Source: Mizuhopecten yessoensis (Eukaryota). Taken from it: a stretch of 64,000 bases of DNA. This document shows positions 2,743-49,700 of this stretch, one piece after another. A program made the translations under genes and the position numbers. The notes beneath the pieces are model-generated. The model did no database searches. It saw only the letters and a program-made list of their open reading frames with translations, and was not told the origin of the DNA. The DNA lies in contig NW_018406352.1 in assembly GCF_002113885.1 (NCBI RefSeq), positions 312,196-376,195 of the forward strand, read 5' to 3'. Position 1 is the first letter of the stretch. Every line of letters starts with the position of its first letter.

Positions 2743-2786
2743 GCATCACGGACGAGTTCAAGAAGTACGAAACAACTGTATGATGC
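2743..2786 (+). ncRNA. Degenerate minimal type I hammerhead ribozyme-like motif (copy A)
   Basis: GCATCA-CGGACGA-GTTC aagaa GTAC-GAAAC aact GTA-TGATGC: perfect 6-bp helix I, helix II with one mismatch, GAAA, GUA cleavage triplet; core differs from CUGAUGA. Confidence 0.6.
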
Positions 2787-2800
2787 GGTGTAAGTTATAT

Positions 2801-2940
2801 CTGGCTTACTGTATACATATCTGACTTACTGTATACATATCTGGCTTACTGTATACATATCTGGCTTACTGTATACATATTCGGTTTACTGTATACATAT
2901 CTGGCTTACTGTATACATATCTGGCTTACTGTATACATAT
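2801..2940. repeat. Minisatellite, 20 bp x7
   Basis: ctggcttactgtatacatat repeated. Confidence 0.95.
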
Positions 2941-3145
2941 TATCAGATTTTGAACATGCAATCACCTGTATGTGTGTTAAATGCACATTGCAGGGGTTTG
3001 CGTCCACTTCACTACCCAGTAGTTCGGCTATCCAACAGACGAAAGCATTGACTATTGATTGGTTTATACACTGTTCGATTTCAATCACATATTGTATATA
3101 GGTGTATTGTGATACTGCAAACGATATTGTGACTTCCGTTTGAAC

Positions 3146-4680: not shown

Positions 4681-4856
4681 GGACTATAACAATAATAACT
4701 TATTTCACTTACAACACATTTCTAATGCATGACCATGCTTAATGCAAATATAGGTTGTATTTTTAGATATATGAAAATAGTTAGGTAATCGTTACGTCAC
4801 TTTCAGCGTAATGCCTAGGCTGTAAGTATGTAAGCTATTGGCTGCCAGATCTGATT

Positions 4857-5150
4857 GGTTTGGTTTAGTTTAGTATTGTTTAACGTCTTATCAACAGCTA
4901 TGGTCATTTAAGGACCGCCTCCCCTGTGTGCAAGATGCATGCGTGTAGTGTATGCGTGTGTGTGTTTGGGAGGCTGCGATATATTCGTGTTTTGTCTCCT
5001 TGTGATAGCGCGGAACTGATGCCGACTTTGTAGTGCTACCTCCCTGAAACATACTGCCGAAGACAACCAGCAGGACACCCCACTCGGTCACATTATACTG
5101 ACAACGGGCGAACAAGTCGTCCCACTCCTTAATTGCTGAGCGTTAACAGA
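4857..5150 (-). mobile_element. 5'-truncated SINE, Meta/MESC-like core
   Basis: Reverse complement of 56524-56795 (cagtataatgtgacc...ggtagcactacaaagtcggcatcag...gacgttaaacaa, (aaacc)n tail); imperfect TSD gccagatctgattgg (4844) / gccaga-ctgatcgg (5152). Family name from recall of the core motif. Confidence 0.8.
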
Positions 5151-6438: not shown

Positions 6439-6529
6439 TTAACTCATTCATCACTGAAGACACACTTGAACTCTTCCAATTCAAGGGTTGGAAAAGTTCA
6501 TTATGAAAATTCAGGGGTGAATGCGTTAA
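6439..6529. mobile_element. 83-bp TTAA-flanked MITE (copy 1 of 4)
   Basis: TTAA-ctcattcatcactgaa...ttcaggggtgaatgcg-TTAA; other copies at 26092, 42465, 59507. Confidence 0.8.
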
Positions 6530-8932: not shown

Positions 8933-9221
8933 CAGGGGCGGGTCCAGGTGAGGGCGTTATGGTTTATTAAAAAAAAACAACAAAAAACAAAAAAAAACAA
9001 AAACTATCGTAATCTGCTAATATTGTATTGAATATGGCAAGTTATACATATTCATTAATTAAACACATACTCTGATTTCTTTTTATACTGATTCCCCGAT
9101 CCGATGGGTGATCCGTAGTTTTTTAGCAAAAAAAAAGGTCAAAATTTTTGTTCGCCTCGCTCCGATCGGCGAAAGATTTGATTTTAAATACCATCTTTCA
9201 AATATCCTAGAAACGCCCCTG
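8933..9221. mobile_element. MITE with CAGGGGCG termini and 5-bp flanking direct repeat
   Basis: caggggcgggtccagg ... cctagaaacgcccctg; GATAC at 8928-8932 and 9222-9226. Confidence 0.65.
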
Positions 9222-10210: not shown

Positions 10211-11029
10211 TATTGTACCATTTGACATGGTTACAACGTCAACAAAGGCAGCATGTCCTGCCTAAGAGACTTATTTTGATAAAAAATTGTTATTAAAATA
10301 TTTCATCTGTATACAATACCGTCCTTAAGTGACCTTAGCTGTTGATAGGACATTTAACCATATACAACAACACCAACTAAATATGTACATTTCACGTTTT
10401 ACCATTATTTTCAATGTAATAGCCTCTGCCTTTCTATCCTCTCGGTACGTAGCTCGTCCTTCTATTGGACAGTGTAACAACGTCAACAAAGGGATTTCAG
10501 ATCAATTGATAACAGCTCATTTGCATACACGCGTTGTAGTATCGTAACCGGTGTCTCTCTCTCTATATATATACACACGCAGAGACTCCATACCAGTACC
10601 GCTAGTGATAGTCTCAATCACACGGCGGGCCCTTCAGTGGATATCAACACATTCATCCCGGTAGCTGCTTTCTTACCAGGGGATCCGTTATACAGCACAC
10701 ATCACGTGGTCCGAGCCTCTATAGAGACCGTACCATGCTACAGTGACTTTACAACGGGTTATAAACATGTGCGTGTGAGTTTTCCTGGAATTATTCAACT
10801 CGACACAGTAAGTGATTTTCTCGTGGATCAATCTCGGTTGAAGTGATTCGGGGAGATGGATTACATTCGCTAATGGTTTTCTCGTTTCGCGACAGTATTT
10901 TGCTGAAAAGTAAGGCAATTCTCTGTAGGGGTTATTTATGTAGATTTTTTTATCGTGTTTTCCATCCAGTCGCGAGAGGTGGATACTGTAGAACACGACA
11001 CATACACCTGTACTTTATTTCGTTATATT

Positions 11030-12060
11030 ATCTGTAAGTAGAGGCACAATTCAAAATATACACTTTCCTTTTCGATTTGAAATTAACCAATACTCCTCCA
11101 GTTTTTGTAATTCATGCAATTCAGGATTTTAACATACATCCACCTCTGTTCCAATGTTGTTTAGACTTTGTAGATCCAAACCATTTGACCTCCGTTATAT
11201 ATCTCTGCGTAGAGGCACAATTCATAATACACACATTCCTTTCCAATTTGGAATTTTTAAAAAGTACTCCGGTGTTTGAAATGATCATAACTAGGGTGTA
11301 ACACACTTTCAACTCTGTTCAAAAATTAGTTTAGACTATTAAGATTACAACAAGTTTAACCTCTAGTGTCACCGATCTTACGTTTACTTTTCAAAGTTTT
11401 ATTCAAATTCGGTAGTTTCTAATTCGGTGGTCATACAGCTCGATGTAATGCCCTTTAGTCAGATAAGATTGTCCTTACCTAATGAATCAGTACTTATCCA
11501 GTGTTTAAAATTAGTTCAACTATTGGGTTCGACGGACCTCCCCTTCTGTTTCGACAACTTGGATCACAACACCAGTTTGCTCCTAGCATCACCAATGAGT
11601 TGTAACAGTTCAAAAAACTGTATTGTAATTTATTTCTGGCAAATTGTTTTTATCACATTCATCAGTACAATATTCCACGGTCATTTAGTTTGAGTGAATG
11701 TCCTTTAGTCAGATTAGCATGTCCTCACTAAATTAACCAGAACTTCTTCAGATTTTGAAATCATATAATACAGTTATGGGGTTAAACGCGCCTCCACCTT
11801 CGGTTTCAAAAGTAGTTTTGTCTATAAGGATGCTAACACCATTTTAGCCAAAAGCAACCCCATTGAGTAATAAGAAAGTCAAAACAGCCGTATGATGCAG
11901 TGAGATTTATGTTTTGGCATATTGCCGCTATTACAAACGTTTATAGAGCAATCATTTATGTTAAACTTCTCTCACTTTTCAAGTTTTCCTTCCAATTCGT
12001 TAGTGCAATGTTCCGTGATCAGTCGATTCGAGTGAATGTCCTTTATTTCGTTTAGCATTT
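11030..12060 (+). repeat. Decayed tandem array (~175-270 bp units) carrying hammerhead-like motifs
   Basis: Recurrent blocks aaattaacca..tcc/ttc..ttttgaaat..cctctgtt..tttagact..ggat..accatttt leading into tag(c/t)(a/g)tcacc(g/a)atg at 11364, 11584 and ~11853; aatg(t/c)cctttagtcaga-like blocks at ~11447, ~11697 and ~12036. Confidence 0.6.
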
Positions 12061-13060: not shown

Positions 13061-13164
13061 TTTTTTGTTGCGTTTATTGAAATTGTATGGTTTAAACTTA
13101 AAGTAGCATACCATTTACTCTTTTTGTTAAAATTGTCATAGCGTTATCAATTCTAATATTCACT

Positions 13165-13480: not shown

Positions 13481-14195
13481 TAGACACGTGATATGATGAA
13501 ATTTAGATACGATATCTGTATTTCAAAGCTTGTAATCACAAAGGCTGGTTTTTTTCCGCTGTCAGTAGGATATGACCGGTAGATGGGTTTACAGGACATT
13601 AAAAGTAGACAGCCGCGTCCTGTTTGATGATGACAAAATAGATCTGTAAGAGATAGCTACAAATATGAATTAATTTAGTAGTATACAAGTATGAACGGTT
13701 TAAGATGTATATCAGTATGGACTTAGCGTATGTATGATAAGGGCAAAATAAAAACCGCACATGTGCTGTAGCTATATTTGATATAATTCGATATGAATAT
13801 TCCATAAAACGTATTATCGATAATAATAAGTTTACGCGTGAAGGTCGACTTCCATAATTCTGACACTTTATGAATCACAGCAGCTTTTTCAAATGGACTG
13901 TCAATATTTCAAGGAAATCTGATTTACACGTCGTAATAGGTATGCTAGTTTACAACGTCTATATAGCACTACTGAATAGTTCATGTAATTATTCCAACGT
14001 ATGTTTAAGCATACATAGAACACAAATAGTGGTTACTAAACAGCCATACAGCTCCAACGTGCTAATATATTATTCAACATACATATACGTCACAACTTTG
14101 TCACCACTTTCTGTGCACATGAATATCTATCACTCGCATACATTTATTCCATGACCAGTATCACACATTTGAGATTGCCAACCTGTTGGTTCCTA

Positions 14196-14240
14196 GCCTC
14201 ACCAATGAGTCCTAAAGGGACGAAACAGCTGTATTGTACA
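14196..14240 (+). ncRNA. Degenerate minimal type I hammerhead-like motif (copy D)
   Basis: gcctca-CCAATGA-GTCC taaag GGAC-GAAAC agct GTA: perfect helix II and palindromic ACAGCTGT helix III; helix I decayed. Confidence 0.6.
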
Positions 14241-14429
14241 GTGTAATTCATTTGTGGTTTACCGTATTTATTACGACAATTTACAGGTGATTCACCTTTG
14301 TGTGTTGCGTTCATAAATCAGATATTGCCCCTGTGGAGTTTTACGTAGCCTAACAGATATGCAGTTTGGTTTTCTATTCCTGACCTGCAAGGATGGTAAC
14401 ATAGGGGCTCAAGGACATGTTCCCTACCT

Positions 14430-16075: not shown

Positions 16076-17805
16076 GTTCATAAATAACACTTTTCTGTCT
16101 ATATCACACTTAACCATATACAAACAAAACTAATCTCTATTAAACAGTAAGGTATCATACATCCTTAAGTCTCTAAGTCACAGTAGGGTGGCATACGTAC
16201 TCGAGTATCTTTGTCATAGACAGGTATAACACATCCTTAAATCATCCATATCACAAGTAAGGTAGCATATACCCTTAAGTTAAAATTCTCACCATTTCGT
16301 TGGAAAAGTTTCGTAGTTTGCCGGTTCGAATCAGTTTAGTCATTTTAACATGTATTCGATGTGCTAATATTCGCTATTCAACTGCAAAAAAAAGAAACAA
16401 AATGAAAACGAATATTCATAAACAGTTATATTTCATTTTATACAGTATAGACTATTACTTTCATTAAATGATTCACGTGATGATGTTAACGTTAAGGATT
16501 CGTGTAACGATTTATTGGCAGTACGTTAATTGAAGAATTGTATTATGGAATATTCTTACCGCGTCTGAGTGTAACTGAACAAGGCGACAAAGATTAAAGC
16601 TATATTTTCGATTCTAGCCAATTAGTGTGAATGAATCGGTCTGTACACATGCTACTCACAGTTATATTAGCGGATCGGCTGCTGCAAAGAAAAGCGTAAA
16701 TAAACATACATAGAGCGCACTATTAGAGTCAAATTAAAGAATACTTTGAAATAGTGATGAATTTTTATTCTGCTATGATTTGTGGCAGGCAATTTATAAG
16801 ATTAATTATTTTTTGACACATTCGGCGATTTTCTGACATTGATACTCAGCCTGTTCGTATGTTCGTTTTTTATTTCACGTAAAGACATATATAACATTCA
16901 ATTAGGATCGACCTTAACACATACGAATGCTATTATTCTATGGACCCTCATGGAGGCCAACCTTTACCGACCCTTATACCATCAACACAATCGTGTATCT
17001 ATCAGTACACATGCTATACTAAGCTTCATTGCGTGCTACAATGTGACTTATTCTTGTAAGTAAACACGTATTGACAATTTTCTATTCTACGCAGTTCCAC
17101 ACGTGTCACTGTAGGGTATACGGCGCCATTTGTAAAACAATAACTGCTACTTTAGCTTCCGGTAACAACGAACTCGCATTAAATAATAATAGCATTGTTC
17201 TCGCCTCTGAGTACCTCTACATCTGCATTACTTACGGTACACTAACAATTTTAAAAACACACAGTTCTGTGCTAGAGAAACGACGGCTGATTCACAATTA
17301 TTGATAATGTTTAACAATTAAAACCATGCATATCAAATTTCCCGGCAGTCAGAATCTAATGACTTTTAAATCGTCTGATAACCTTTTTAAGAACGCGCCA
17401 TCGCCCTGTAAAATTCAATAAACGCCTTTGTGAGCATTGAAAAAACTACAAATTTATGCGTGTAACACATAAAACAATTCAATAACATTTCTGGTGCTTG
17501 AGTCAGTTGTAATGTTTGTGAACGGAAAAAAAACGGTAGAAGGAAAAATTCCGACGATTCCTCGATATTTATTGTTCCATAGACGTCAATGTAATTATGT
17601 AATTCTTCTGCAATGATAACTGTTTTGAATGGTACTCCATGTCTGTGAACATCCCCTTCCTTAACTTCGTAAAAATGACTTCGCAACATCGATTTACAAT
17701 ACTCGTCAACATTTTGAAATTCATCAATTAAGAAGTTTTACGCACCTGGTCCTCTGTTTCTACAGTGGTGTAGGCGGATTAGGATTGTCATCTCTTTGAC
17801 CCCTA

Positions 17806-17849
17806 TCATCACGGATGAGTCATAGAAGGACGAAACACCTGTATAATTC
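17806..17849 (+). ncRNA. Degenerate minimal type I hammerhead-like motif (copy E)
   Basis: tcatca-CGGATGA-GTCA tagaa GGAC-GAAAC acct GTA; the upstream ~90 nt resembles the 11-kb repeat units. Confidence 0.55.
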
Positions 17850-19067
17850 AGTTCAATTCACATTTGGTGTACTGTATATATTTCTTATCTTAAAGGTGCG
17901 ATAATATGTGTATGCTTGTCCCTGCTAAATTCGTCTTTCTTAATTTTATTGCAAGAAATGTAAAATTTTCAGAGAAATGAAAGTCATTTATAGGTCGTCA
18001 AATATTGTGCATTGATCTATATATAGGTGTTCTCATCAAATTACCGGACCACCATTTTTTTTAAAGAAGTAGCTTGGGGCCATTAGGCACAAAATAACTA
18101 TTTTAGGAATGTAGAAGCTTGGTAACTTTTTAAATCAACCCACGAACAAACCCCAAAAATCTTGGTTATTCCGTGTATTTTAATTCATAAGACAAACATG
18201 TATTTCATACGTGCTCATTTAATTAACAGTTGTTCCTTTTGGACAAAGAAATCAAGGTTGCCATTTAATAGCAAAGACTCCACAAATGAAAAAGCAGCAT
18301 TCAAAATAATGTACAACTCGGTGATTTTTTAATTTTCAAATACTACATCAACATCCTGGATTGATTTACATTGTTTACACATGTGCATTGCCAGCTTTCA
18401 AACACTGATATTTTCAGTTTAAGAAGTGACAATGATCACTTCTCAAGGATATATGTCTCACTGCATTGCGGATTCTCATCTATGCAGTAACTGTAATTTA
18501 TTTTCGTTTTACACACAACTAAGGCCAGTACACTTCTGTTATGATTTTCCTAAATAAAGTATATTGTACTTTTCATTCAGAAATAATTCATCATTATATC
18601 TATAGTCATGCCGGTAAAATAAGTTTCGAATGCAATATTTTCATGTTTTGGCAGTGCTACAGGGATTGAAAGGTAAAACTACGTTTAGTGGAAATTTGTG
18701 CATTATCTACACAGAGCGTGTCTTGGCGAAGGAAAGAAACTCTTTTTTTGGGGGATTTTTATTAAAAGCTTAGTAATAAACTACACTTCCACAAGCTTTT
18801 GTATTAAAATATCCGTTTGAATATCTTTCAATCCAGTATAAGGAAATGACGATGATAATATATTTGTTAATCTCCCTGATCAAACGAACCTTTCTACTTG
18901 AAGGTATTGTATTACAGACACAAAAACAATATACACATCATTGCAGTTCAAATCAATTTCAGCAAGTTTTGTTTTTTGTAAATCGACACACGTTTCCGGA
19001 TTAGACTGTGTGTGACTGGTTCCACGATTACCGGACCACCATATACAAAATCCCTGTCCCTTTGCAT

Positions 19068-21401
19068 ATGAAACACTATCATATAAAACACTATCATATA
19101 CAACACTAACATATATAAAACACTATCATTTGAAACACTATCATATAGAACACTAACATACAAAACACTATAATATAAAAAAACTAACATATAAAACTCT
19201 AACATATAAAACACTATCATATTAAACACTATCATATAAAACACTAACATATAAAACACTATCATAAAAACCACTGATATAAAACACAATCATATAAAAA
19301 CACTATAATATAAAACACTATCATATAAAAACACTATGATATAAAACACTATCATATAAAACACTATAATATAAAACACAATCATATAAAACACTATCAT
19401 ATAAAACACTAACATATAAAACACTATCATAAAAACCACTATGATATAAAACACAATCATATAAAAACACTATAATATAAAACACTATCATATAAAAACA
19501 CTATGATATAAAACACTAACATATAAAACACTATAATATAAAACACAATCATATAAAACACTATCATATAAAACACTAACATATAAAACACTATCATAAA
19601 AACCACTATGATATAAAACACAATCATATAAAAACACTATAATATAAAACACTATCATATAAAAACACTATGATATAAAACACTATCATATAAAACACTA
19701 TAATATAAAACACAATCATATAAAACACTATCATATAAAACACTATCATATAAAACACTATCATATAAAACACTATCATATAAAACACTATCATATAAAA
19801 CACTATAATATAAAACACAATCATATAAAACACTATCATATAAAACACTATCATATAAAACACTATCATATAAAACACTATCATATAAAACACTATCATA
19901 TAAAACACTATCATATAAAACACTATCATATAAAACACTATCATATAAAACACTATCATATAAAACACTATCATATAAAACACTATCATATAAAACACTA
20001 TCATATAAAACACTATCATATAAAACACTATCATATAAAACACAATCATATAAAACACTATCATATAAAACACTATAATATAAAACACAATCATATAAAA
20101 CACTATCATATAAAACACTATTATATAAAACACTATCATATAAAACACTATCATATAAAACACTATAATATAAAACACAATCATATAAAACACTATCATA
20201 TAAAACACTATTATATAAAACACTATCATATAAAACACTATTATATAAAACACTATCATATAAAACACAATCATATAAAACACTATCATATAAAACACTA
20301 TAATATAAAACACAATCATATAAAACACTATAATATAAAACACTATTATATAAAACACTATTATATAAAACACTATTATATAAAACACTATCATATAAAA
20401 CACTATCATATAAAACACTATAATATAAAACACAATCATATAAAACACTATCATATAAAACACTATAATATAAAACACAATCATATAAAACACTATCATA
20501 TAAAACACTATTATATAAAACACAATCATATAAAACACTATAATATAAAACACTATTATATAAAACACTATTATATAAAACACTATTATATAAAACACTA
20601 TCATATAAAACACTATCATATAAAACACTATAATATAAAACACAATCATATAAAACACTATCATATAAAACACTATAATATAAAACACAATCATATAAAA
20701 CACTATCATATAAAACACTATTATATAAAACACAATCATATAAAACACTATCATATAAAACACTATAATATAAAACACAATCATATAAAACACTAACATA
20801 TAAAACACTATCATAAAAACCACTATGATATAAAACACTATCATATAAAACACTATAATATAAAACACAATCATATAAAACACTAACATATAAAACACTA
20901 TCATAAAAACCACTATGATATAAAACACAATCATATAAAAACACTATAATATAAAACACTATCATATAAAACCACTATGATATAAAACACAATCATATAA
21001 AAACACTATAATATAAAACACTATCATATAAAACACTTTCATATAAAACACAATCATATAAAAACACTATCATATAAAACACTATCATATAAAACACAAT
21101 CATATAAAACACTATGATATAAAACACTATCATATAAAACACTAACATATAAAACACTATCATATAAAACACTATAATATAAAACACAATCATATAAAAC
21201 ACTATCATATAAAAACACTATGATATAAAACACAATCATATAAAACACTATTATATAAAACACTATAATATAAAACACTATCATATTAAACACTATCATA
21301 TAAAACACTATCATATATAATACACTATCAAATGAAACACTGTCATATGACATACTATCATATAAAACAATATAATGTAAAACTCTATCATATAAAACAC
21401 T
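19068..21401. repeat. 15-bp minisatellite, ~155 copies
   Basis: tatcatataaaacac repeated; source of the spurious 436-aa minus-strand ORFs. Confidence 0.98.
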
Positions 21402-22254
21402 AGATCAGACATTCTTCAAAGGTCTTTTATATATACCTACAGTTTGTTTTGTTTGTTCCTCGCGTCAGTTAATATAAGGTGATATATAGACATTATCCAC
21501 TGATAATCAAATTTCCCTCTTAGCAAAGGACACAGAACAAGCTACTTTCTATACGGGGATACCACAACAGCTATATATTTTTAATGGAACAATTTCTGTT
21601 ATAATAACAGGTTATTTATTGGCAAAATAAAACCGTTTTTTTTCAGTCATACATTTTTTAACCCAACAGACACAGATCTCTTATCATCAGCAAAATACAA
21701 AACAATTATGAGTTGAGGGATTTTTGTTCACTAGCACAATTAAACGTTAGTTGCATCTTGTAGACCATAATTCGAATACAGTAAATGTATGATGAAATAC
21801 TCTCTTCACATCACCTTAGATGTTGTTTGGACGTTAAACCACAAAGAAATAATACAAAGCTATCTCATGTTTCTATCAACACAGTGCGCTTTAAAAAACA
21901 AATCTTAATGACGTTTTCCTTTGTCACATATCTCTGACTACATGTAAAAATGCAATATGTTAACAAGGATTCCACGAATGGTTTTTTTTTCTTTTTCTAA
22001 ATAGCATGTTTTTTTATATACAGTAGTTTCCTTTTGATAGGTTTCTGACTTTGATAAACAACCGTTTTCTAACACAAACTCGTGGGTATAAAAATATCTA
22101 ATACAAGTTTTATGCAAGTTTCGTCTATTGCCTGTAACCTATTATATAAGAATATAAGTCTAAATTCTGAGTTATATCACAAACTCTGTATGTAGGACAT
22201 GCTAATAAACATACTTCGATATTACACAGTTTGAACATAACTTTTTAATAATGG

Positions 22255-25700: not shown

Positions 25701-28700
25701 AGCTAAGACTATGATTGTTTTGCACGTACAACACAGACAGTGTTTATCACTTGCTTCTTCCTAGAAAATCAAACTTTGGGGAATATAAAATTGTTATAGC
25801 ATCTTGATATGTTAAATGACCTCTCTGATAACACACGATAGGAGGTTCTACAAGATCTGCTATTGAATTACCCTATCGCACGCCAAACGCTAATTATTTC
25901 TCGTTGATTTACATCTTCCTTTATAGAAATACTATAACCATAGGGTTTCGGTTTTTGCTGCTTGTTATTCTAACACATGATATGTTTTTAAACAATACTA
26001 TACAAATACGGAGCGCGGAACACACAAATGCAATTCACAGATTCGTATTCACACAGCTAACTCCCGAACGACCTCTTTTTGATAATATTTGTTAACTCAT
26101 TCACCCCTGAAACTTCAAAATGAACTATTCCAACCATTGATTCGGAAGAGTTCAAATGTGTCTTCAGGGGTGAATGAGGTAACGCTCATTTAATAGTTAT
26201 CCAGACACATCTCACTTTTTTCTTTTATTAAATTATATACAATTATTGAACGTGGAACAGACAGAAACGATCAACAGATCCGAGGTCACCTAGCTAGAGA
26301 TCCCAATGACATCACACGTAGAAAAAGATAACGTTGACTATTGTTTTCACATATTTGTAATTATCATTATTATTCTCATACCTTCCCATTGATCATTGAG
26401 CATTTACCGAAAAGCGACGTGTTTTTATCTTAATTTTCAATCCTCCATCTTCACTTAATATGTTCCCCTGGTAAAGATGCGCTACCCTTATTGTCGGTTT
26501 ACAGTAGTATCAATTCAACATTTCTCGACTGCTGTCCGAAAAGTTTGCGGATCTCAAGTTCACAAAACGTTTGCCCTGAGAAAAAAGAAAGATATTTTAC
26601 CCCAACGACACAATTCAAAATAATTTGGGTGATATATAACAAAATAATTTCTATTCTTTAAACCCTTAGGCATGTATACAGAATCGTGATTTATCTTGAT
26701 CATCTTATTATATTTTTTAAGGAGTCAAGGTCAATTTATTTTTATGAAGGTTATTTCAAATAAATTATTTTTAGAATTGTAATATCATATTTCCCTTGAA
26801 GCTGTACATACTAATTAAGTGAGTTTTGACTTCGCCATATTTCAATTTTATGACTCATATCAAAATATGCTGCGTACGCTCTCAATGTATTACTATAACC
26901 CATGCCATTTCATTTTGTTTGGTATTTTTTCTAACATGTTAATGACATTTTAAATGTTTTTTAAAAAATATTTTATTTTACTCGTCGAGTCAAAGAAGCA
27001 AATTAAAACAACTCTAATTAAATTAAACACTTAAAATTAATTTTCAATATCTGGGTAGAAAACCTGATAGCAAGCCTTAAACAACAAGAATACAGAAAGA
27101 AAGAAGCTTCTTGGGAACACTTAAATAGTCTAAAATAGCGAAATCTTCCAACAGTCAATTTTAATAACAAATTCGGAGGAAATTAATTTCTTGTGATTTT
27201 TTCAATCTTCATTGTTGTTATAAAATGATTCATATTTCGTTCATAATATCAGAAATCTTTCCAGTCTTCTCTGCTATTAAAAAGTGATTCATATTTCGTT
27301 CAGAATATCAAAAAGCAAGAAACCAATGTATGCGGGAAAGACTATGAAAACTAATAACTAAGATTCGAAGTACGGTAGCACTTTACCAAGATTTAAAGAA
27401 GCCAGACAAACTAGTATTTACTTCATAATTTGGATAGTTTGTCGACTCATCAGTGACAATATTGGTCAAAAGAATGACAGTCTATTTTTCTTGTACCCGA
27501 AATATAAATATGAGAGGAATGCTATCACTAAAAGCAAATGGAGAAATATTACATTGATGCATCTCCTACAAAACACTAAAGTTGACCAATTTAAACTAGG
27601 GAATAATTAAAAACAACAGAAGCAACGACGAAACCATAATGAACATGTGAACAGTATAAAAACATCATGAAATATGTGAACAGTATAAAAACATCATGAA
27701 ACATGTGAACAGTATAAAAAAACATCATAAAATATGTGAACAGTATAAAAACATCATGAAACATGTGAACAGTATAAAAACATCATGAAACATGTGAACA
27801 GTATAAAAAAAACATCATGAAATATTTTAACAGTATAAAAACATCATGAAACATGTGAACAGTATAAAAACATCATGAAACATGTGAACAGTATAAAAAC
27901 ATCATGAAACATGTAAACAGTATAAAAACATGATGAAATATGTGAACAGTATAAAAACATCATGAAACATGTGAACAGTATAAAAACATCATGAAACATG
28001 TGAACAGTATAAAAACATCATGAAACATGTGAACAGTATAAAAACACATCATGAAATATGTGAATAGTATAAAAACATAATGAAACATGTGAACAGTATA
28101 AAAACATAATGAAACATGTGAACAGTATAAAAACATCATGAAACATGTGAACAGTATAAAAAAACATCATGAAATATTTTAACAGTATAAAAACATCATG
28201 AAATATGTTAACAGTATAAAAACATCATGAAACATGTGAACAGTATAAAAACATCATGAAACATGTGAACAGTATAAAAACATCATGAAACATGTGAACA
28301 GTATAAAAACATCATGAAATATGTTAACAGTATAAAACATCATGAAACATGTGAACAGTATAAAAACATCATGAAACATGTGAACAGTATAAAAACATCA
28401 TGAAATATGTGAACAAATAACAGGCACCGCCGAGAGGAAAGAGTAGGTAAGAGTCGCCTCTTACAATCATGCAGTGAAGTTACAGCAGGTCTATTATTTC
28501 CCCGAACTGCAATCTGATTATTCTTAGCGAGAAGGTTTAAGAAACTATAATAATTAGTAATTGATATATATTTTATGATATATGATGTAGACGAAAACGC
28601 TTGTTCGACCATTTTTTTTTTATTGTTTACCCGTGCATTTGATTATATTGAAAAAAATAATACCAAATGAGTCATACTAATTATATTGATGCGCCTTTTG

Positions 28701-34700: not shown

Positions 34701-37700
34701 TTATTACTGTTTTTATTATTGTTCAAAGTTAACGAGGCGTCACGTTGTTTGTTTTCGGGACAATGTGGGACACAGATTCGTCCATCAAATCATCTGTGTT
34801 GTCTCTAGAAACAGAGGATTGGTCTAACACGGAGGCGCTACTATTGTCTGTATGTATCAGCATACTCGCTTTGGGACACAGTGTACGAACACAAAGCATT
34901 GTTAGTTTGACAAATGTAAAAAAAAAAAACGCTACACAAAATTTGTCTATGTTTCCAAATTACCTGTAAAAATTTACCATATTTTTATCTTTAATAGATG
35001 TAAAAATGAATTCTCAATTAAATATTTATAATTAAATTGCAAATTTTAAAAGAGATTATTGTGTTTCATTTTCAAGGATTACAAGTTAAGCTGTTGATTC
35101 TTTTGACACAACAGCAAATATATCTCTAATACTAATAATACTCTGTCGTACCGTCAACCTGTGGACTGAGTGACTCATCAATAAAATATCAGTGGCGAAG
35201 CAACTCCCTGTCGTATCCTGTGTTGTGGTATCATGATCCGGCCGTATCGTTATTGGGTTTTAATGTCTCCATGTGTTGCCATCATCAACTCCCAGTCCTC
35301 GTCGATATGTGACAGATGGGTGGAACATTGACGGCAAAATACACGCAGATACACAACACTCGGAACATATTAGCAGATTAAGATGTCTGTTATATATACG
35401 AATTATATATACGAATTTCAATGGTACTGTATATTTGCGGATATAAAAGATATGGGAAATAGTAATATATTACAACTTTAAGTATTTCATTGGTTATCTT
35501 TTTTAGTCTGTATGGAGCAATTGGGAAGGCATTTCCACTGTTATAAATCCGTTATGACATCAGTGACATTTACATAGGTTAACGTTTTGTACATTGGCAA
35601 ATGCTATTCTTTCTTCTCTTCCTATTTCTTATCCTCTTTCTTCTATTTCAAATCTCTGTTATCCATTATTATTTCTGCTAAGGAAACAGATTGATATAAT
35701 TTAAAAACTTATTTCTGGATCCTATTTCATGTATGTAATAATTAAATGTTCTGTATATTGTAATTGCTAATTTACGATATAAAATATGGTTTATACTAAA
35801 TGGGAAGGCTATATTGTTGATGTCTTTGCTTCAGAGGTTGTCTTATTTAAGCGGGTATCGAACAAATGGGAAATATATATTGGAAATGTTTTTTGCTTCC
35901 GTGCGTTTCCTATTTTAGCGGAAATAAAAAATATTTTGTGCTACATGTATCAGATATTGTAGCACTTGTTAACTAGTTACCATATTGCGGCGGATATTTT
36001 CCGTCTTTGCGTATTGCAGAGTTATCTTCTCCTGTGAGCAGGTATTGAATGTTACGTCATTTGTTTGTGAGAGTAACTTCATCAATTTTTGAGAAAACGA
36101 CGTAATTTTCTCACACAAACCAATGACGTAACAATCAATCCCTGTTCACAAGAGAAGATAACTCTGCAATACGCAAAGACGGAATAACAGATTTGAAGTA
36201 GACTAATATAATTATTTTTTTAAATTGTCATCCTATTTAAGCTTATAATGTTTATTATTATAAAGTTAAATATTTATTATAAGTATTTTAACGTTAGTGG
36301 TTGTTTAGTTTTAGCGGTCATAAAATATTTGGTAAATAATTAGAAACCTTCAAAACATATGGGTATTTGTTGTCATTTTTTTCGCCGATATATAACGAAT
36401 AGGGATGATACTTATTGATTTAAGTTGTTGACATATTTTAGCAGATATAAAACACATATTTGTATATGATTGTTTTTCTTGATCGACACAGCTAATCTCA
36501 TTTGAATGATAGCGTGGTTCATAAAACACACACTTTTCAGGTTATTGATATGAAACTATCCTACACTTCTTTTGAAATTCATAAATTGAGAGGTTTGACG
36601 CACCTTCCGACCTGTTTCGAAAGAAGTTAAAACCATTTTTGATTTCCTTTTTTTGGCCACTTGCAACACTGTTAAGTTCTTAAAGGACAAAACAGCTCCA
36701 TAGTGCCATGTTATTTATTTTCAGCATGCTGTATCGATTACCAATTGTTTAAGGGAATATGTGACCTAACCTTCTGATATATGTAATCTAACCTTCTGAT
36801 ATATGTAATCTAACCTTCTGAAATATGTGACCTAACCTTCTGATATATGTGACCTAACCTTCTGAAATATGTGACCTTACCTTCTGAAATATGTGATCTA
36901 ACCTTCTGAAATATGTGACCTTACCTGCTGATATATGTGACTTTACCTTCTGATATATGTGATCTAACCTTCTGAAATATGTGACCTTACCTTCTGAAAT
37001 ATGTGATCTAACCTTCTGAAATATGTGACATAACCTTCTGATATATGTGACCTTACCTTCTGATATATGTGATCTAACCTTCTGATATATGTGATCTAAC
37101 CTTCTGATATATGTAATCTAACCTTCTGATATATGTGATCTAACCTTCTGAAATATGTGACCTAACCTTCTGATATATGTGACCTAACCTTCTGATATAT
37201 GTGACCTAACCTTCTGATATATGTGATCTAACCCTCTGATATATGTGATCTAACCTTCTGATATATGTGATCTAACATTCTGATATATGTGACCTAACCT
37301 TCTGAAATATGTGATCTAACCTTCTGAACTAACCTTCTGAAATATGTACCCTAACCTTCTGAAATATGTGACCTAACATTCTGAAATATGTGACCTTACC
37401 TTCTGAAATATGTGATCTAATCTTCTGAACTAACCTTCTGAAATATGTACCCTAACCTTCTGAAATATGTGACCTAACATTCTGAAATATGTGACCTAAC
37501 CCTATGAAATATGTGATCTAGGAGGCGCAGTAGTCTAGTGGTAGGACGCCGGGCTCGTGACTGAAGGGTTGTGGGTTTGAGTCACGGCACAGCACTATGT
37601 TGTGTCTTTGAGCAAGATACTTTATCCCGCTTGTTCCATTCTATTCAGCAGTAAAATGAATGCGTGGTTGGGTAGTGACAGAATAGTTGAAAACTAGATG

Positions 37701-43700: not shown

Positions 43701-46700
43701 TTGAAAACCATTATCTGCTCGTAATGGACACTTATCTATTCAAACATCTGTTAGACTAGCTTAATAAACACTCCGGTTTGTTACCACAAATAGTAGGCTT
43801 TGTTATCACAAACACTTTGAAAGTCTGCGTAACGTGTATTCTCGTTAATGTTAGCCAGACGATATCAATTAGTTTTCTATTTATCAACTTATAATTAGTA
43901 CTTTTCACAAACATTTGATTTATCATCAAAAATATTTTTAAGGCTTTGTGTGACATAAATTTCCATTGACTTAAGACAGACAGTGCAAGAGACTTATCAC
44001 TCCACCCATGCAACCGCAGGTCATACTGTCTATATTGAGTGCGAACTTCCTGTTTACCGTGTTGTTTATATAATTTCATCAAAACGTTGTCCTTTGAAAC
44101 GATCGGGTTCACACTGAAAGTATTTTTGCATACCTTGCCAATGCCAGGTGTATATATATTACAACGGTTCGTATTCTCCGACAGGGAATTTTTCATTACT
44201 GATATATAATGACAGTTTCAGGTACAATTTCCGTAATTTTGTTCCAAAATATTTGTACTGGTATTGTCCAATTTAGCTTGACAACCTCATTAGTTTTTCT
44301 ATTTCCTATCTCCGTGTTTCTTTCAGGAAGTTAGATGATATTGTATCTACCTAATATACAAGTGGATATATTAGATTAATTGTTTTTCCTCCTATGACGT
44401 CAGAATATATTCTTATGGTAACTGTAGATACAACAAGAGTGATTAATATAAGTTGTTAGAACTTGTTTCGCAATTGTTGTAAAATATATAAAGCATACAT
44501 TTTGATCGCAATTTTAAATAGATCTGAACAAAAACAACGAACTAACATCTGCATCCACGCACCTTGTATCAGACCCATCCACGCACCTTGTATCAGACCC
44601 ATCCACGCACCTTGTTTGTAACAGACCCATCCTTCGGCACAGGTTTTCGTGTTTCGACACGTGGTAGATACCACAATAGATAAGCCACAATTTTCGATTT
44701 GTACTTTCGTGAGAAACACTTAATCACACTGTGTTAATATTATCACTGGTGGGATTTGTTCGTTTTACATGGACATAGTGTGCCTATTTTTGAACTTGGT
44801 TCTATTTCTAAACAAACATCTCTTCTTCTGTTTCCCCAAGCGTATGCTTTGCATAATTACACTATATTACCCTGGAATGAATTCCATGGTGGGAAGCCAT
44901 TACATTCTTAGAATGAGTGATACTACTCATGAAGCACACCTATCATGTAGGAATTACAATTCACTAAGGCATGGACAGTAGTGGTACAGGATATTTAGGT
45001 GAATTAAACAATAACAAGCATGAAGTTTACAAATAGCTTTTCATGGGCTTTAACCTGATGCTTACCGTATGTTATTGTATTAATCAAAACTTCAACCACC
45101 CAATGAGAAATCAATATAATTAACTAGAATAACTGATTAATTACTTTATTACTAATTAATCTGAATGACGAGACATTGGGCCTTGCTCTAGCCTTGTTAG
45201 TTTAACGAAACGTTAATTGAAGTATATCATAAATTACATTAAATAAACGTTATGTATTCATAACTTAAACTGCCTAGAAATGAAATAACAAATAAACATT
45301 TGAAAATAGTTACCTAAAAACCAAAAAAATAACTGTAGAACAAATTTCCTATTTGCAAAGTTTAGTCGGTGGCTTTATAGGCTAACAATTCCTCAAAACC
45401 TTGGCAAGAATACATGTTATTATATGTATAACGAAGGCGCACCTTGTATGGATAGTTTATTCAGAATGCGGTATTGGTACAATAAACTAGGACGATTCTA
45501 AAGCAAAAAGATATGGTTCTTCCCAAATAGAAATTGGATTAATTACTTATACAATCTTCAACGGGAATTACCTTTATGCAATAGCTAAAGTACGAAACGG
45601 AATAGATGGTACATTGTAACCCCGCGTTTTGTTCACCATGGTAACGCGTCTTCCAACGTTGGGGAGCGTGATTGGTTAATTTATTTATGTTACTTTGCAC
45701 GCATCTTATTTTCAGAAGAGTTCAGAATTCGCGATCGTGGAATTTAGCCCATGGTTAATTTAACTAATAGTACACTTGAACGCCTGTGTCAATAATTATA
45801 CTGTGATGATTAATTATTAGATTAAGTAGCGTAAATGGACAATGAACTTCAACAAGAAATGCAATACTGCAGTAACGGTCATTACAGACAGCGCAACACC
45901 AAACGAAAGTCCAAATATAAACGGGTTTTTTTGACACCCACAAGAAATATCATCACTTCAATAGTGTTATGAAAATTCCTTAAAGAGTGCAGAAACATTA
46001 CTTTTTTACCAGGATTAAAAAATAAGAGCATCAAGGAATATCAAAATGAATTTATTGTTATCAAAATTTCTCTTGAGAGCGCAGAAACAAATGACTATAT
46101 AACAAGGAATAAAAAAGAGCATCAATGAATATCAAAATTAAATCATTGTTATCAAAATTCCCTTAAGAGTTCAGAAACATATTACTATATAACCAGGATT
46201 AAAATTAAAGCAGCATAAAACGACATAAACGTCCTCCCAGCCTGTAAGCTCGTTATAAAGACCGATGTCACGGGAAACACCACCTAAAAAAAGGAAGGAG
46301 AGAAACGATGAGAAACCAGGTCTGTTAATGGGGTCAGTAGATCAAATTCTGTTTTTGCAGTATTCACAAGAAGGTAAACATAGAAAATTCACCCGTTTTG
46401 CATCAATCACCTCCTAAGGCATTTTTTCATTTCAAAATATTTTATTAAATCAATCAGATTTAATGGGAATTGGGCAACAGGCAAAACCTATACAAGCCCT
46501 CTCCAAGGAGGTACATCTCAAACAATAGCAATATAATGAACTATAAATATTTACATAATGAACATGCTTTAGGAACAAAAGAATTAAATCAGTGCCAATG
46601 ATGATAGGAGACACCATTCTTACACATACATGCATGCATACATACATGCACAAACATATATACATACATACATACATACATACATGCATGCTCCTAAGTC

Positions 46701-49700
46701 ATGTTGCATGATGCAGCAGGTATGCTCTTTCCCCAAACCTGCAGGGAGGTACAAACGTTCTTTCTTGCTCCAGTTATATTATCTAAGCATATTTAACTGT
46801 TTCGTCTATCGCCATATCCCAATATGTATTTATCTATGAGTTAAGCCTGAAATGATAATGCATTAGATACATTATTACAAGACGATTGAACGAATTAAAC
46901 AATACTTTCACGCTCGATTAAAAGGTCACGTACGTAAGTGTATTCTCGGTTAAACTAACGACAATATACATCGATTTTTCTTTAGGAATGTACGTTTGAT
47001 GTCTGCAGACACAAATGCAATTTCTAAAGATCGATGTTGCCTATATACCTAAGCGACAAGATTCATAATTATAACTTTGAATTATTTATATACATCAGCT
47101 GCACTTGTAGATTCTGCATTATCCATAAATAATTCGATAATTCAACATATGTGTATTTAACACTTAACCTGACTACAATCCTTAGCACATACATGTAAAG
47201 TAATGTTGATACACGGTAAGCTAATACAATGTGAGATGTTATACATGAGTTATGTTACAGTTATCTCCCTTACATACCGTACATTTTCGTGCTGTAATAA
47301 CATACACTTTATAAAGTTAAAGCATAAATTCTAATTTAATTTAGCAATGAACGTAAGTCCAACTTACCACTGCTTTATTTTAAACATATTTATAAGAGTA
47401 TGAAAAACTCTTGAACATACAATAACCAATATGCCATATTGTATGGATATTATCCACAGAAAATAAATGCTAAAATATTTTGTTTATGCAAGTGAAACCG
47501 TCCACTAATGCCACGATTTGTCTATCAGGATTTAGGCAATATATCGAGCGATAAGCGACGACGATCTGTGAAAAAATAGAAAAAATGAATACATGAAATG
47601 GAGGCCTTCAACGGAGATTACAGTGTATACCTCGTTTGCAAGCCGTTATTCATATCACAATAACGTCACTAATACCCTTAACACAACAGAAAGTACACGA
47701 TAGATTGATCGATATACTGAACAGTACTTACATGTAGCTACTGTTGTTGTATCTTATAACAATCCACCTGACACAGATCGATTGTCATAATCAATAAAAC
47801 AGTAATAAAAAAAGTATTTCGGGAATCGAGTATAAGAATGGTTTCGTTTGATTTGCAAAGGGTTCAACGGCCTCGTAACAGCTAAGGTCATATGAAGACT
47901 GACGCTTAGAGATGTTAGCCGGAAATAATGAGTAGGAAAGTGCATAAAGAAAATACAAGGTATTATAATTAGTGCAGTATAGCCGTTTATGTTTCTTCAA
48001 TGTGCGCTCAGCATGAGGAAAAACAAACAAAAACAAAAACAAAAGTCTGCAGGGGCTCCCAAATTAGTCGCCTATTACGGTACCATGCAATTGTATACAG
48101 CAGGCTTGTTCATGTCTCAAGCCTGCAGGGGTTGTAGAAAAAATGTCGTTCCTCGTCAGTCGTCCTCCTGCAGTATATATGAGGGGACCAAGTGAAGGCA
48201 CATTAGGCTGATCATTGTCTATAGCACTTATAATGGGAACTCGTAAATTCCCGTTCCGAACATTCAAAAGAAATAGTTTTCCAAATAGAAGATTTCGTAT
48301 TAACCAGGGTCCACTGTAAACATAGAACATAGTCTGTGTAAGTATGAGGGCATTTGCCTGAATGTATCTTTCAAGGAGGTAGACTCCCCTGGTGGATTTT
48401 GTCGGTCCTGCTGATGTTTGCCCTAACCTTGAAGGCCACAGTTATTTCCTTTTAGTAATGGCAAGGTTCATAATTCACAGACTTAACGCCGATTTTAAAT
48501 TAACCAGGGCTCCAGTGCTTCTCTTATACTAGAAATTCATATAATTAAAAGGGTTTTTTGCCCATCTCCCTTTGTCTCAACAATAGTATTAGATTTCCAT
48601 ACTTAAGCCCCATCACTGAGAAGTCCTAGGACGACAAAACAACTGGATGGTGCAAAGTTATTCATGTTTGGCATACTTTATTAATGTTATAGGTACACTC
48701 ACGTGCTTACATTTTTCGATCATCTTTAAATAATACAGAACAGCATTATGATGTGTATTATCTTGTTTCCGTTTCAGTATGGCATTGACGTTATCATTGT
48801 AATTGTGCTTGCTGTTGTTGCTGGTGTCTTAGCCTGGTTCCTGGGATCTGGAGTAAGTTTCATGTTGTTTTGTTTCTTTTCTCTACCGATTAGTCCTAAA
48901 TAGACGAAACAGCTGTATGATACAGTGTAATTCATTTTTTGTTAACTATATATATTGCCAAATTGTAAAGGTACTATACCATCTATGTTTATTACGTTCT
49001 CTTTGTATATCATCCATTTTATCGTTAGTCCTTACTTTGTAATATTTGACGAAAATCGGTTTCATAGCAAACATGATATTTATGTGGACGTTAGATTTTC
49101 CAATAGGTGGACTACAGGGGGCTTCATATATCGCTAAAATGTATATTGTGCTGTAAAGAACAAATAAAGCAAACAATTGTACAATGATGTATATATCGGA
49201 ATGAAGTAAACGTACACTGATGGGAAGTAATCTAATTTGTCAGTTTTTGCGCTATAAACATTGCGGTTGTATATATTGCATTAATTAAGTTCTTGTTTTA
49301 TAGTTTAATATGGATTGTATTGTAAGTGAGCAAATTCATTAATGCGGTTATCTGTTAAAATAAATAAAATAATAACTTAAATTTGTGTCTGCTAGAATTT
49401 GCACTCTTACCGTAGATGGGAAGTAAAATGTGTTAATATATTCTAAAATAGCGATTCCATCTCACAGCACATCATTAAACTTATTTTATTTATTTAAATT
49501 ACATGACTACGCTCAATACTGACCTTATTGTACTTATTTTAATCGCCCGCAGAGAGTAGTAAAATGTTTAATTGCTTCTCGATAAAACAATATTCACTGT
49601 TCCATACCAGCGGTTTTGTTCTCTACTGAAAACTGTCATTTGCAAAATCAATTATCTAAATCGCCTCCATTATGTTTTGGTAAACAATTATCAATAAATG

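What the first reader, a model, noticed from the sequence alone, without database searches (positions are those of the whole stretch)
2743..48923. Dispersed repeat family carrying minimal type I hammerhead-ribozyme motifs with a non-canonical core
Seen: at least six + strand copies (2743, 11586, ~11853, 14196, 17806, 48886; partial at 11364) give the consensus GCATCA-CCGATGA-GTCC-N5-GGAC-GAAAC-AGCT-GTA-TGATGC, then agtgtaatt. Helix I (GCATCA/TGATGC) is perfect in copy A, helix II is perfect in copy D, and helix III is the palindrome ACAGCTGT. Known: this is the topology of minimal type I hammerheads of Penelope-like elements and animal non-LTR retrozymes, where palindromic helix III allows dimeric cleavage. 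Unusual: no copy has U at position 4 (C in five, G in two), and CCAATGA is the expected CpG decay of CCGATGA. Inference: the founder had a CCGAUGA core, so strict CUGANGA searches would miss the family. No single copy here looks intact.
Basis: partly seen in the sequence, partly recalled or inferred. Interest (0 to 1): 0.8.

Follow-up and report, generated by a model that had tools for sequence, protein, structure and literature searches.

The report
Fossil hammerhead-ribozyme repeats, C4 core
The window holds decayed copies of an old, non-coding retroelement family of a scallop-type animal genome; each copy carries a classic type I hammerhead ribozyme in which one supposedly invariant core base (U4) is C in most copies genome-wide, which is a modest curiosity and not a new kind of system.

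Summary
The repeats are real and far above chance. A family-specific covariance model finds seven copies plus one weak one, all on the + strand.

Genome-wide (988 Mb) the family has at least hundreds of copies, with 3,443 first-look candidates. Intact copies align end to end with Rfam Hammerhead_1 but score 24-33 bits, below the gathering score of 34.

The architecture is helix I 6 bp, helix II 4 bp, helix III 2 bp with a palindromic AGCU loop. That is the canonical metazoan type I hammerhead of non-LTR retrozymes, not the Penelope "minimal" form. A dimer with an 8-bp helix III is strongly favoured in silico.

Exact counts with the rest of the motif intact are CCGAUGA 113, CUGAUGA 32 and CCAAUGA 18. 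The bulk of the family therefore came from C4 masters, but U4 copies exist and are not clearly older or younger.

The unit is about 360 nt with no ORF. Copies are 5'-truncated and often partial tandems, with a Penelope-like "tail" junction.

The family is old: the best pairwise identities are 78-86%. RNA-seq shows low passenger-type expression and no ends at the cleavage site. There is no covariation, as expected for dead copies.

Another reader of this scan had already noted the 11030-12060 array as retrozyme-like.

The parts
2729..2817 (+). Copy A: 5'-truncated element relic. The hammerhead relic is at 2743-2786, with perfect helix I, position 4 = G and broken helix II.
   Evidence: (50.6 bits)
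2797..2992 (+). 20-bp minisatellite (7 units, 2797-2940) grown from the post-hammerhead segment of copy A, followed by the rest of the element tail (2916-2992).
11006..11960 (+). Decayed head-to-tail array of four partial units (spacings 171-338 nt). Hammerhead relics: P at 11364 (cut off after CCGAUC), B at 11586-11628 (internal deletion, CCA) and C at 11854-11898 (CCA).
   Evidence: also noted by earlier finding s1-510957
14167..14314 (+). Copy D: hammerhead relic at 14196-14239. It is the best in the window (54.6 bits), with helices II and III intact, core CCAAUGA and a damaged helix I 3' strand.
17712..17899 (+). Copy E: hammerhead relic at 17806-17849, position 4 = G, with mismatches in helices II and III.
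36473..36754 (+). A 22-bp minisatellite starts at 36756, right at its 3' end.
   Evidence: (17.7 bits)
48412..48774 (+). It lies 269 nt upstream of copy F and may form a two-unit tandem with it.
   Evidence: (24.9 bits)
48879..48972 (+). Copy F: hammerhead relic at 48879-48923 (CCGAUUA, helix I 5' strand lost). It starts about 25 nt after an exon-like segment that ends in GTAAGT.
   Evidence: (37.5 bits)

Best explanation
The window carries dead copies of an old, non-autonomous, ORF-less retroelement family of the animal 'non-LTR retrozyme' / Penelope-dependent kind.

**Shown**
- The repeat unit is about 360 nt and carries one canonical type I hammerhead: helix I 6 bp, helix II GUCC/GGAC, helix III 2 bp closed by the palindromic loop AGCU, cleavage expected after GUA.
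- Copies are variably 5'-truncated and share a preferred 3' end (GTTCATCTT).
- Copies are often partial tandems of the form [hammerhead-to-end][full unit]. An ~11-nt linker is seen only at internal junctions.

**Inferred**
- This is the pattern left by target-primed reverse transcription that starts inside a multimeric or circular RNA template, as described for Penelope-like elements. The family was probably copied in trans by a Penelope-type RT/GIY-YIG enzyme, and such enzymes are abundant in this genome.
- In multimeric transcripts two neighbouring hammerheads would pair through the palindrome into a double hammerhead and cut out unit-length RNA.

**Position 4**
- The masters that produced most copies carried C instead of U at core position 4.
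- CpG deamination after insertion then produced both CCA (dead) and CTG (canonical) copies. A minor U4 source lineage cannot be excluded.
- I judge it somewhat more likely than not (about 60:40) that the C4 ribozyme cleaves poorly, and that efficient cleavage was not needed for the family to spread.

The family is now extinct or nearly so, and its copies are transcribed only as passengers.
For: **Family and motif**
- DNA searches give 824 and 3,443 first-look candidates, with best identities of 78-89%.
- The 34-nt motif with up to 1 mismatch occurs 147 times against 0 for the reversed control.
- Rfam Hammerhead_1 aligns over model positions 1-45 of 45 to intact copies, E from 8.6e-5 to 0.2.
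- The dimer has a minimum free energy of -33.3 kcal/mol, in exactly the double-hammerhead fold, against 2 x -9.4 for monomers.

**Position 4**
- With helices II and III fixed: 39 CCG, 15 CTG, 5 CCA.
- With helix II only fixed: 113 CCG, 32 CTG, 18 CCA.
- In the least selected sample, C is about 70% and T about 23%.
- U4 copies are scattered on a star-like tree: 9 changes for 11 rows against a shuffled mean of 10.

**Architecture**
- Copies have variable 5' starts and a shared 3' end.
- Partial tandems and the internal linker are seen in L049, L023, L012, L021 and L015. Hammerhead spacings are 268-371 nt.
- No Penelope-type ORF lies beside copies, and full copies give no tRNA, 7SL or 5S match.
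- GIY-YIG domains are abundant in the genome, with 370 candidates.

**Literature**
- Penelope elements form partial tandems, start reverse transcription internally (the 'tail' signature), insert equally well with dead hammerheads, and show no RNA-seq ends at the cut site (PMC11167929).
- Mussel retrozymes are 350-390-bp repeats with a type I hammerhead (PMC7229834).
- Retrozymes derive from Penelope pLTRs (bioRxiv 10.64898/2026.07.22.740005).
- A U4C variant lowers activity in vitro yet suffices in a viroid in vivo (PMC3088659).
- Mutants in the CUGA turn have low activity (PMC9901934).
- At least 10 copies carry G12 to A with an otherwise perfect motif, 9 of them with the unchanged loop 2. 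This is compatible with spread of a catalytically dead lineage.
Against: - **No autonomous partner found.** The three Penelope loci sampled share no sequence or hammerhead with the family. That is 3 of about 370 candidates, so the test is weak.
- **No clear target-site duplications** were found by a crude search.
- **Unit-length RNAs do not fold well.** RNAs cut from two tandems fold no better than shuffles (z = -0.95 and -0.74), unlike the highly self-paired retrozyme circles. These copies are about 10% decayed.
- **RNA-seq gives no sign of cleavage or circles.** Four raw runs give only 200-481 family reads each, on both strands. There is no pile-up of ends at the cleavage site and no unit-junction joints.
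- **The CTG:CCA ratio is uneven.** It is 32:18 (p = 0.065) and 15:5 (p = 0.04). It differs from the TG:CA ratio of 2:10 at the second CpG of the motif, so pure symmetric decay does not explain everything.
- **Two rough clocks disagree on the age of U4 copies.** Loop 2 is kept in 57% of CCG copies against 31% of CTG copies. Yet 4 of the 7 least diverged sampled copies have U at position 4: 3 CTG and 1 TTG.
Confidence: 0.7

Rival explanations
1. C4 is a working natural core variant. The CCGAUGA hammerhead cleaves well enough as a tandem dimer, or with protein help. On this reading the family is, or recently was, a true retrozyme that makes unit-length circular RNAs.
For: - C4 is kept in the majority of copies, including those with every other core base intact.
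- The hammerhead is the best conserved part of the element: 0.92 identity to the majority, against 0.6-0.87 in the flanks.
- The dimer fold is very stable.
- A viroid U4C variant is viable in vivo (PMC3088659).
- A Penelope hammerhead needs its protein to cleave (PMC11167929).
Against: - Mutations in the CUGA turn give low activity in a comprehensive screen (PMC9901934).
- RNA-seq shows no ends at the cut site and no circle junctions, and expression is low.
- There are no young copies.
- Unit RNAs are not unusually structured.
- The conservation peak includes the loops and may partly reflect how copies were collected.
Confidence: 0.17
2. The real founder was canonical (U4). The C4 majority is secondary, for example a product of post-insertion mutation bias or gene conversion, so there never was a C4 master.
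For: - U4 copies are more frequent than CCA copies: 32 against 18 and 15 against 5.
- Several of the least diverged sampled copies carry U4.
- The only relatives found elsewhere, in lake metagenome tandem repeats, carry U4.
Against: - T to C would have to occur independently in over 100 copies and create a CpG, against the known direction of CpG decay.
- C4 is 3.5 times as frequent as U4 among otherwise perfect motifs.
- U4 copies do not cluster on the tree.
Confidence: 0.04
3. The motif is not a ribozyme relic but a chance or convergent hammerhead-like sequence inside an ordinary SINE or satellite.
For: - There is no covariation among copies.
- All Rfam scores are below the gathering threshold.
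Against: - 14 of 15 core positions, all three helices and the cleavage triplet match in register over the whole Rfam model.
- A related tandem repeat in metagenomes has the same helices II and III and a fully compensated helix I: GCAAUG/CAUUGC against GCAUCA/UGAUGC.
- The element organisation matches known hammerhead-bearing retroelements.
Confidence: 0.03
4. The intronic, same-strand copies have been co-opted by the host gene, for example as ribozyme switches acting on its pre-mRNA.
For: All six to seven independent insertions in the window are on the + strand. Copy F and the copy in L041 lie next to exon-like segments.
Against: - Every window copy has a broken core or broken helices.
- The copies are no better conserved than neutral repeats.
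- The host gene's strand was not established.
Confidence: 0.03

Closest known systems
Metazoan non-LTR retrozymes (Cervera & de la Pena 2020, PMC7229834), especially the 350-390-bp repeats of the mussel Mytilus galloprovincialis
   Same: - ORF-less repeats of about 270-370 nt between hammerheads.
- One type I hammerhead per unit, with 6-bp helix I, 4-bp helix II and a short helix III with a palindromic loop.
- Tandem organisation, in a bivalve host that also carries Penelope elements.
   Different: - Here most copies are solitary and 5'-truncated, and arrays are only 2-4 units long.
- The majority core has C4.
- No abundant circular RNA signature was seen, and unit RNAs are not notably self-paired.
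- The family is old and decayed.
Penelope-like elements and their pLTR hammerheads (PMC4209133, PMC11167929)
   Same: - Partial-tandem insertions.
- A preferred 3' end with an extra 'tail' seen only at internal junctions.
- A hammerhead near the 3' part of the repeat.
- Spread that does not need ribozyme cleavage.
   Different: - There is no RT/GIY-YIG ORF.
- The hammerhead is the canonical 6/4/2 form, not the Penelope minimal form with a 7-8-bp helix II.
- No sequence is shared with the three Penelope loci sampled.
- The Penelope variant another agent reported in this genome is U3-A8, a different change.
Schistosoma Sm-alpha SINE-like element and newt satellite 2 hammerheads (cited in PMC4209133)
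   Same: - A dispersed or tandem element of about 330 nt with a type I hammerhead that has GUCC/GGAC as helix II.
- An unstable helix III that calls for a double-hammerhead dimer.
   Different: Those have the canonical CUGAUGA core and proven cleavage. Here the core is mostly CCGAUGA and activity is untested.
Natural U4C hammerhead variant of a viroid (as cited in PMC3088659)
   Same: The same single core substitution. It reduces activity in vitro but is compatible with biological function.
   Different: That is a sequence variant of a replicating type III viroid hammerhead. Here it is the majority state of an amplified genomic type I family.
565-bp tandem repeat in lake metagenome contigs (L079-L081)
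   Same: Identical helix II, helix III, palindromic loop and cleavage triplet. Helix I is compensated, and the repeat is arranged in tandem.
   Different: It has U4. It shows no flank similarity, has a longer unit and comes from an unknown organism.

Membership tests
Hammerhead ribozyme, type I (Rfam RF00163) | Three helices around the core in type I order (helix I open, helices II and III closed) | tested here: met
   Intact genomic copies align over model positions 1-45 of 45 with all helices formed. Window copies align to the family model R1 over positions 1-44 of 44.
Hammerhead ribozyme, type I (Rfam RF00163) | Conserved core C3 U4 G5 A6 N7 G8 A9 / G12 A13 A14 / A15.1-U16.1 / H17 | tested here: not met
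   All positions are met except U4. C is found in about 70% of copies: 113 CCG against 32 CTG among otherwise intact motifs. A minority of copies meet the full core.
Hammerhead ribozyme, type I (Rfam RF00163) | Score at or above Rfam's gathering threshold (34 bits) | tested here: not met
   C4 copies score 23.8-29.0 bits and U4 copies up to 33.3 bits. A canonical U4 relative from metagenomes also scores only 28-30 bits. The window gives nothing at E<=10.
Hammerhead ribozyme, type I (Rfam RF00163) | Self-cleavage after H17 | tested here: inconclusive
   Four raw RNA-seq runs show no pile-up of read ends at the site, and reads span it. The expressed copies are mostly decayed, and the libraries are not suited to small cleaved or circular RNA.
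Hammerhead ribozyme, type I (Rfam RF00163) | Covariation supporting the helices | tested here: inconclusive
   Within the family there is none: 87.0% of positions are paired against 87.2% in shuffles. This is expected for neutrally decaying copies. Between families, helix I is fully compensated in the metagenome relative.
Metazoan non-LTR retrozyme | Tandem repeats of about 170-400 bp, each with a type I hammerhead, without an ORF | tested here: met
   Hammerhead spacings are 268-371 nt in two-unit tandems and in the window array. There are no element ORFs. Most copies, however, are solitary fragments.
Metazoan non-LTR retrozyme | Abundant unit-length circular RNA that is highly self-paired | tested here: not met
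   Read numbers are low and there are no unit-junction joints. Fold z-scores are -0.95 and -0.74. The libraries and the decayed copies limit this test.
Penelope-dependent non-autonomous element | Partial-tandem insertions with an internal 'tail' (reverse transcription starting inside the template) | tested here: met
   Terminal copies end at GTTCATCTT, give or take a few nt. Internal junctions carry about 11 more nt before the next unit starts. Compare PMC11167929.
Penelope-dependent non-autonomous element | 3' region shared with an autonomous Penelope element of the same genome | tested here: not met
   Three GIY-YIG loci, all of one Penelope family, share nothing with the repeat. Only 3 of about 370 candidates were sampled.
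Penelope 'minimal' hammerhead (min-HHR) | Helix II of 7-8 bp, helix I of 4-5 bp, no helix III or loop 3 | tested here: not met
   The motif has a 4-bp helix II, a 6-bp helix I and a 2-bp helix III with a 4-nt loop (alignment A2). The definition is in PMC4209133.

The most novel reading that the evidence does not exclude
CCGAUGA is a functional natural hammerhead core. On this reading the C4 ribozyme cleaves as a tandem dimer, perhaps helped by a Penelope protein. Selection kept it in the master copies, and the accepted hammerhead consensus should allow C at position 4 in animal retrozymes. A twist follows from this: methyl-CpG decay of genomic copies then creates canonical U4 ribozymes after insertion.
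Probability: 0.2. Interest if true: 0.6.

Novelty: new variant of a known kind. Interest (0 to 1): 0.4.

Why it matters
If C4 masters really drove the expansion, one of two things follows.

- A core base held to be invariant is tolerated in a natural animal hammerhead.
- Or ribozyme cleavage is dispensable for the spread of these elements in vivo, which would back the in vitro result for a lizard Penelope element (PMC11167929).

Both can be tested with a simple cleavage assay of C4 against U4 dimers.

In practical terms, motif searches that require CUGANGA, and Rfam's threshold, undercount hammerhead-bearing repeats in this genome several-fold. Beyond that, the family is an ordinary old retrozyme-type repeat.

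Tried and rejected
- **Rfam on the window:** no hammerhead at the gathering threshold or at E<=10.
- **Covariation among 84 copies:** none beyond shuffles. I rejected this as a test of structure because the copies decay neutrally.
- **Age comparison of C4 and U4 copies:**
  - Flank divergence shows no difference (MWU p = 0.70), but the measure is rough.
  - The loop-2 clock suggests U4 copies are older.
  - The least diverged copies are mixed.
  - The question stays unresolved.
- **Possible U4 subfamily marked by loop CAGAA:** 4/32 against 4/100, p = 0.10. Not established.
- **Autonomous partner:** ORFs beside copies are host genes or LINE fragments (Otopetrin, B-box, RVT_1). Three Penelope loci are unrelated to the family.
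- **Target-site duplications:** none convincing with BLAST-defined ends.
- **Rod-like structure of unit RNAs:** not seen.
- **RNA reads:** no cleavage ends and no circle joints. The only go-back joints (38, 50 and 54 nt) fit a hammerhead-derived satellite such as the one in L012.
- **Literature searches:** searches for a scallop hammerhead or for 'CCGAUGA' gave nothing relevant.
- **Weak - strand hit at 27420-27459:** it is only a CUGAUGAG word, not a hammerhead.
- **Host gene strand in the window:** not established. Pfam on long ORFs found only repeat artefacts.

Full report
**1. Observation**

The core pattern with up to three mismatches occurs four times against 0.03 expected from shuffles.

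I built a covariance model (R1) from 30 well-preserved genomic copies (alignment A2) and ran it without filters over the window.
- It finds 14196, 2743, 17806, 48879, 48610, 36663 and 11854 (E from 5e-15 to 0.04), and weakly 11586. All are on the + strand.
- It also shows that the two extra copies have T at position 4. In the window, position 4 is therefore C five times, G twice and T twice.
- Rfam reports no hammerhead in the window even at E<=10.

**2. The family in the genome**

The window is contig C3025:312196-376195 of a 988-Mb assembly in 82,659 contigs. Another agent's note in this scan calls the organism a scallop. I did not verify the species.
- A 181-nt query around copy D gave 824 first-look candidates.
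- A near-majority copy (L036:1409-1628) gave 3,443 candidates, and its best matches were only 78-86% identical.
- The best sampled copies are about 90% identical to the family majority. A tree of 49 copies is star-like, with a median terminal branch of 0.16.
- This is an old burst with no young copies in the sample.

**3. Is it a hammerhead?**

Intact copies align end to end with Rfam Hammerhead_1 (model positions 1-45 of 45).
- Scores are 23.8-29.0 bits for C4 copies and up to 33.3 bits for U4 copies. All are under the gathering score of 34.
- The layout, read from alignment A2, is GCAUCA - CCGAUGA - GUCC - UAGAA - GGAC - GAAA - C-AGCU-G - UA, followed by the cut and UGAUGC.
- With helix I of 6 bp, helix II of 4 bp and helix III of 2 bp closed by a 4-nt palindromic loop, this matches what Cervera and de la Pena call the canonical metazoan type I hammerhead. 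It is not the Penelope 'min-HHR', which has a 7-8-bp helix II and no helix III (PMC4209133).
- Two copies co-fold into the double hammerhead with an 8-bp intermolecular helix III at -33.3 kcal/mol, against 2 x -9.4 for monomers.
- Among 84 copies there is no covariation: 87.0% paired against 87.2% in shuffles. That is what neutral decay of inserted copies predicts, so it neither supports nor refutes the fold.
- Support from outside the family comes from a scan of metagenome contigs. It found a 565-bp tandem repeat whose hammerhead has the same helix II, helix III, loop and cleavage triplet. Its helix I is fully compensated (GCAAUG/CAUUGC) and its core is canonical U4.
- That canonical relative also scores only 28-30 bits in Rfam. 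The Rfam miss is therefore a property of this architecture, not only of C4.

**4. Position 4**

Whole-genome exact counts (reversed-pattern controls all 0):

| Motif required | CCG | CTG | CCA |
|---|---|---|---|
| Helix I end, helix II, core and helix III fixed | 39 | 15 | 5 |
| Core and helix II only | 113 | 32 | 18 |

- In the least selected sample (loci from the DNA search, bystander copies and the window), position 4 is C in about 70% and T in about 23%.
- T to C would have to create a CpG independently in over 100 copies.
- CpG decay gives both CCA and the canonical CTG. Decay thus turns some copies into consensus hammerheads after insertion.

Some features do not fit a pure symmetric-decay picture.
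- CTG exceeds CCA: 32 against 18 (p = 0.065) and 15 against 5 (p = 0.04).
- The motif's other CpG shows the opposite skew, TG 2 against CA 10.
- Nine of the ten G12A copies keep the unchanged loop 2, which hints at inherited source-lineage variants, one of them catalytically dead.

The relative age of U4 copies is unresolved.
- U4 copies do not cluster on the tree: 9 changes for 11 rows against a shuffled mean of about 10.
- Loop 2 is intact in 57/100 CCG, 10/32 CTG and 3/18 CCA copies (p = 0.015 and 0.002), which suggests that U4 copies are older.
- Four of the seven least diverged sampled copies have U at position 4, three CTG and one TTG.
- A minor U4 source lineage cannot be excluded.

**5. 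Element anatomy**

- Coverage plots and profile hits show a unit of about 340-360 nt with variable 5' starts and a preferred 3' end at GTTCATCTT.
- Many loci are partial tandems. A 3' part that begins at the 5' edge of the hammerhead is followed by a full unit (L049, L023).
- At internal junctions about 11 nt (roughly TCAAGATACAA) link the 3' end to the next unit's start (GGTGGTAGAC...). Terminal copies stop before this linker.
- Hammerhead-to-hammerhead spacings are 268-371 nt.
- Copies have no ORFs. Neighbouring ORFs are host genes or LINE pieces. Full copies give no tRNA, 7SL or 5S match.
- Partial tandems, internal initiation of reverse transcription and an extra 'tail' are exactly the Penelope signature described by Frangieh et al. 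(PMC11167929). That paper also found that hammerhead-dead mutants insert normally, and that RNA-seq shows no ends at the cut site.
- The size and organisation match the non-LTR retrozymes, for example the mussel's 350-390-bp repeats (PMC7229834). These are now argued to derive from Penelope pLTRs (bioRxiv 10.64898/2026.07.22.740005).
- GIY-YIG domains are abundant in this genome, with 370 candidates. The three loci I could fetch belong to one Penelope family that shares nothing with the repeat. The partner is therefore not identified.

**6. RNA**

No indexed RNA run holds the intact copy. I laid four raw RNA-seq runs of the species on L041:1150-1800 at 80% likeness or more, so that reads of all family members pile up.
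- They gave 200-481 reads per about 12 million records. Nearly all were under 90% alike, and both mate orientations were equal.
- Depth peaks on the hammerhead.
- No excess of ends appears at the cleavage site (between 1534 and 1535).
- There are no unit-junction joints.
- The share of T at position 4 varies widely between runs (8-74%). It is driven by a few decayed copies, for example ones with G12 changed to T.
- This looks like passenger transcription.
- Unit-length RNAs from two tandems fold no better than shuffles.

**7. Activity of C4**

- A comprehensive mutational screen found low activity for all mutants in the CUGA turn other than the C3/G8 swap (PMC9901934).
- Perreault et al. note that a U4C variant is much less active in vitro yet supports viroid infectivity (PMC3088659).
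- Searches of the accessible literature for U4C and for the CCGAUGA core turned up only that viroid U4C case and no report of a C4 core as the consensus of an animal family.
- I cannot test activity with these tools.

**8. Verdict**

- The thing is a fossil retrozyme-type, probably Penelope-mobilised repeat family with a U4C majority core. It is a variant of a known kind and of moderate interest.

Noticed in passing
window 2797-2940; L012:2022-2326; L060:1470-1549: Minisatellites have grown out of pieces of the element. One is a 20-bp unit from the post-hammerhead segment of copy A. Another is a 38-nt unit made of the 3' half of the hammerhead in L012. RNA reads with a 38-nt go-back joint show that such a hammerhead-derived satellite is transcribed somewhere.
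   Followed up: partly
window 36756-37520; L027:1000-1312: 22-23-bp minisatellites start exactly at the 3' end of copy G and abut the 5' end of the L027 copy. Element ends seem to seed or attract satellite arrays.
   Followed up: no
genome-wide (places listed): At least 32 copies have the canonical CUGAUGA core with intact helix II. If the founder was C4, some or all of these are consensus hammerheads created by CpG deamination after insertion. Some have intact helix I as well (for example L064 and L063).
   Followed up: partly
genome-wide: Ten copies carry G12 to A, the general-base position, with an otherwise perfect motif. Nine of them have the unchanged loop 2. This may be a catalytically dead source lineage that still amplified.
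   Followed up: no
L079, L080, L081 (lake metagenome contigs): A 565-bp tandem repeat carries a canonical type I hammerhead: GCAAUG / CUGAUGA / GUCC..GGAC / CAGCUG / UA / CAUUGC. It looks like a retrozyme of an unidentified freshwater eukaryote. Rfam scores are 28-30 bits, below the gathering score.
   Followed up: partly
window 36044-36136 (-) and 53973-54084 (both strands): Two copies of a long palindromic hairpin element share the arm GATTGTTACGTCATTGGTTTGTGTGAG. They give sub-threshold hits to several miRNA families and are probably a MITE-like repeat.
   Followed up: no
window 19065-21402: A 15-bp microsatellite (155 copies) creates two 436-aa open frames on the - strand. One of them gives spurious Pfam 'pentapeptide repeat' hits.
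   Followed up: partly
window, all family copies: All six to seven independent insertions of the family in this 64-kb window are on the + strand (chance about 0.02-0.03). Copy F lies about 25 nt after an exon-like segment ending in GTAAGT at 48855. This may be an orientation bias within a long gene. The gene's strand was not established.
   Followed up: no
window 2743 and 17806: The two copies with G at position 4 (CGG) are both in this window. No CGG copy was seen among about 70 copies sampled elsewhere. They may share a local origin.
   Followed up: no
genome-wide; L076-L078: GIY-YIG endonuclease domains are very abundant (370 candidates, 46 scored over the cut-off), so Penelope-like elements are a large component of this genome. 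The three sampled loci are arranged as inverted copies.
   Followed up: partly
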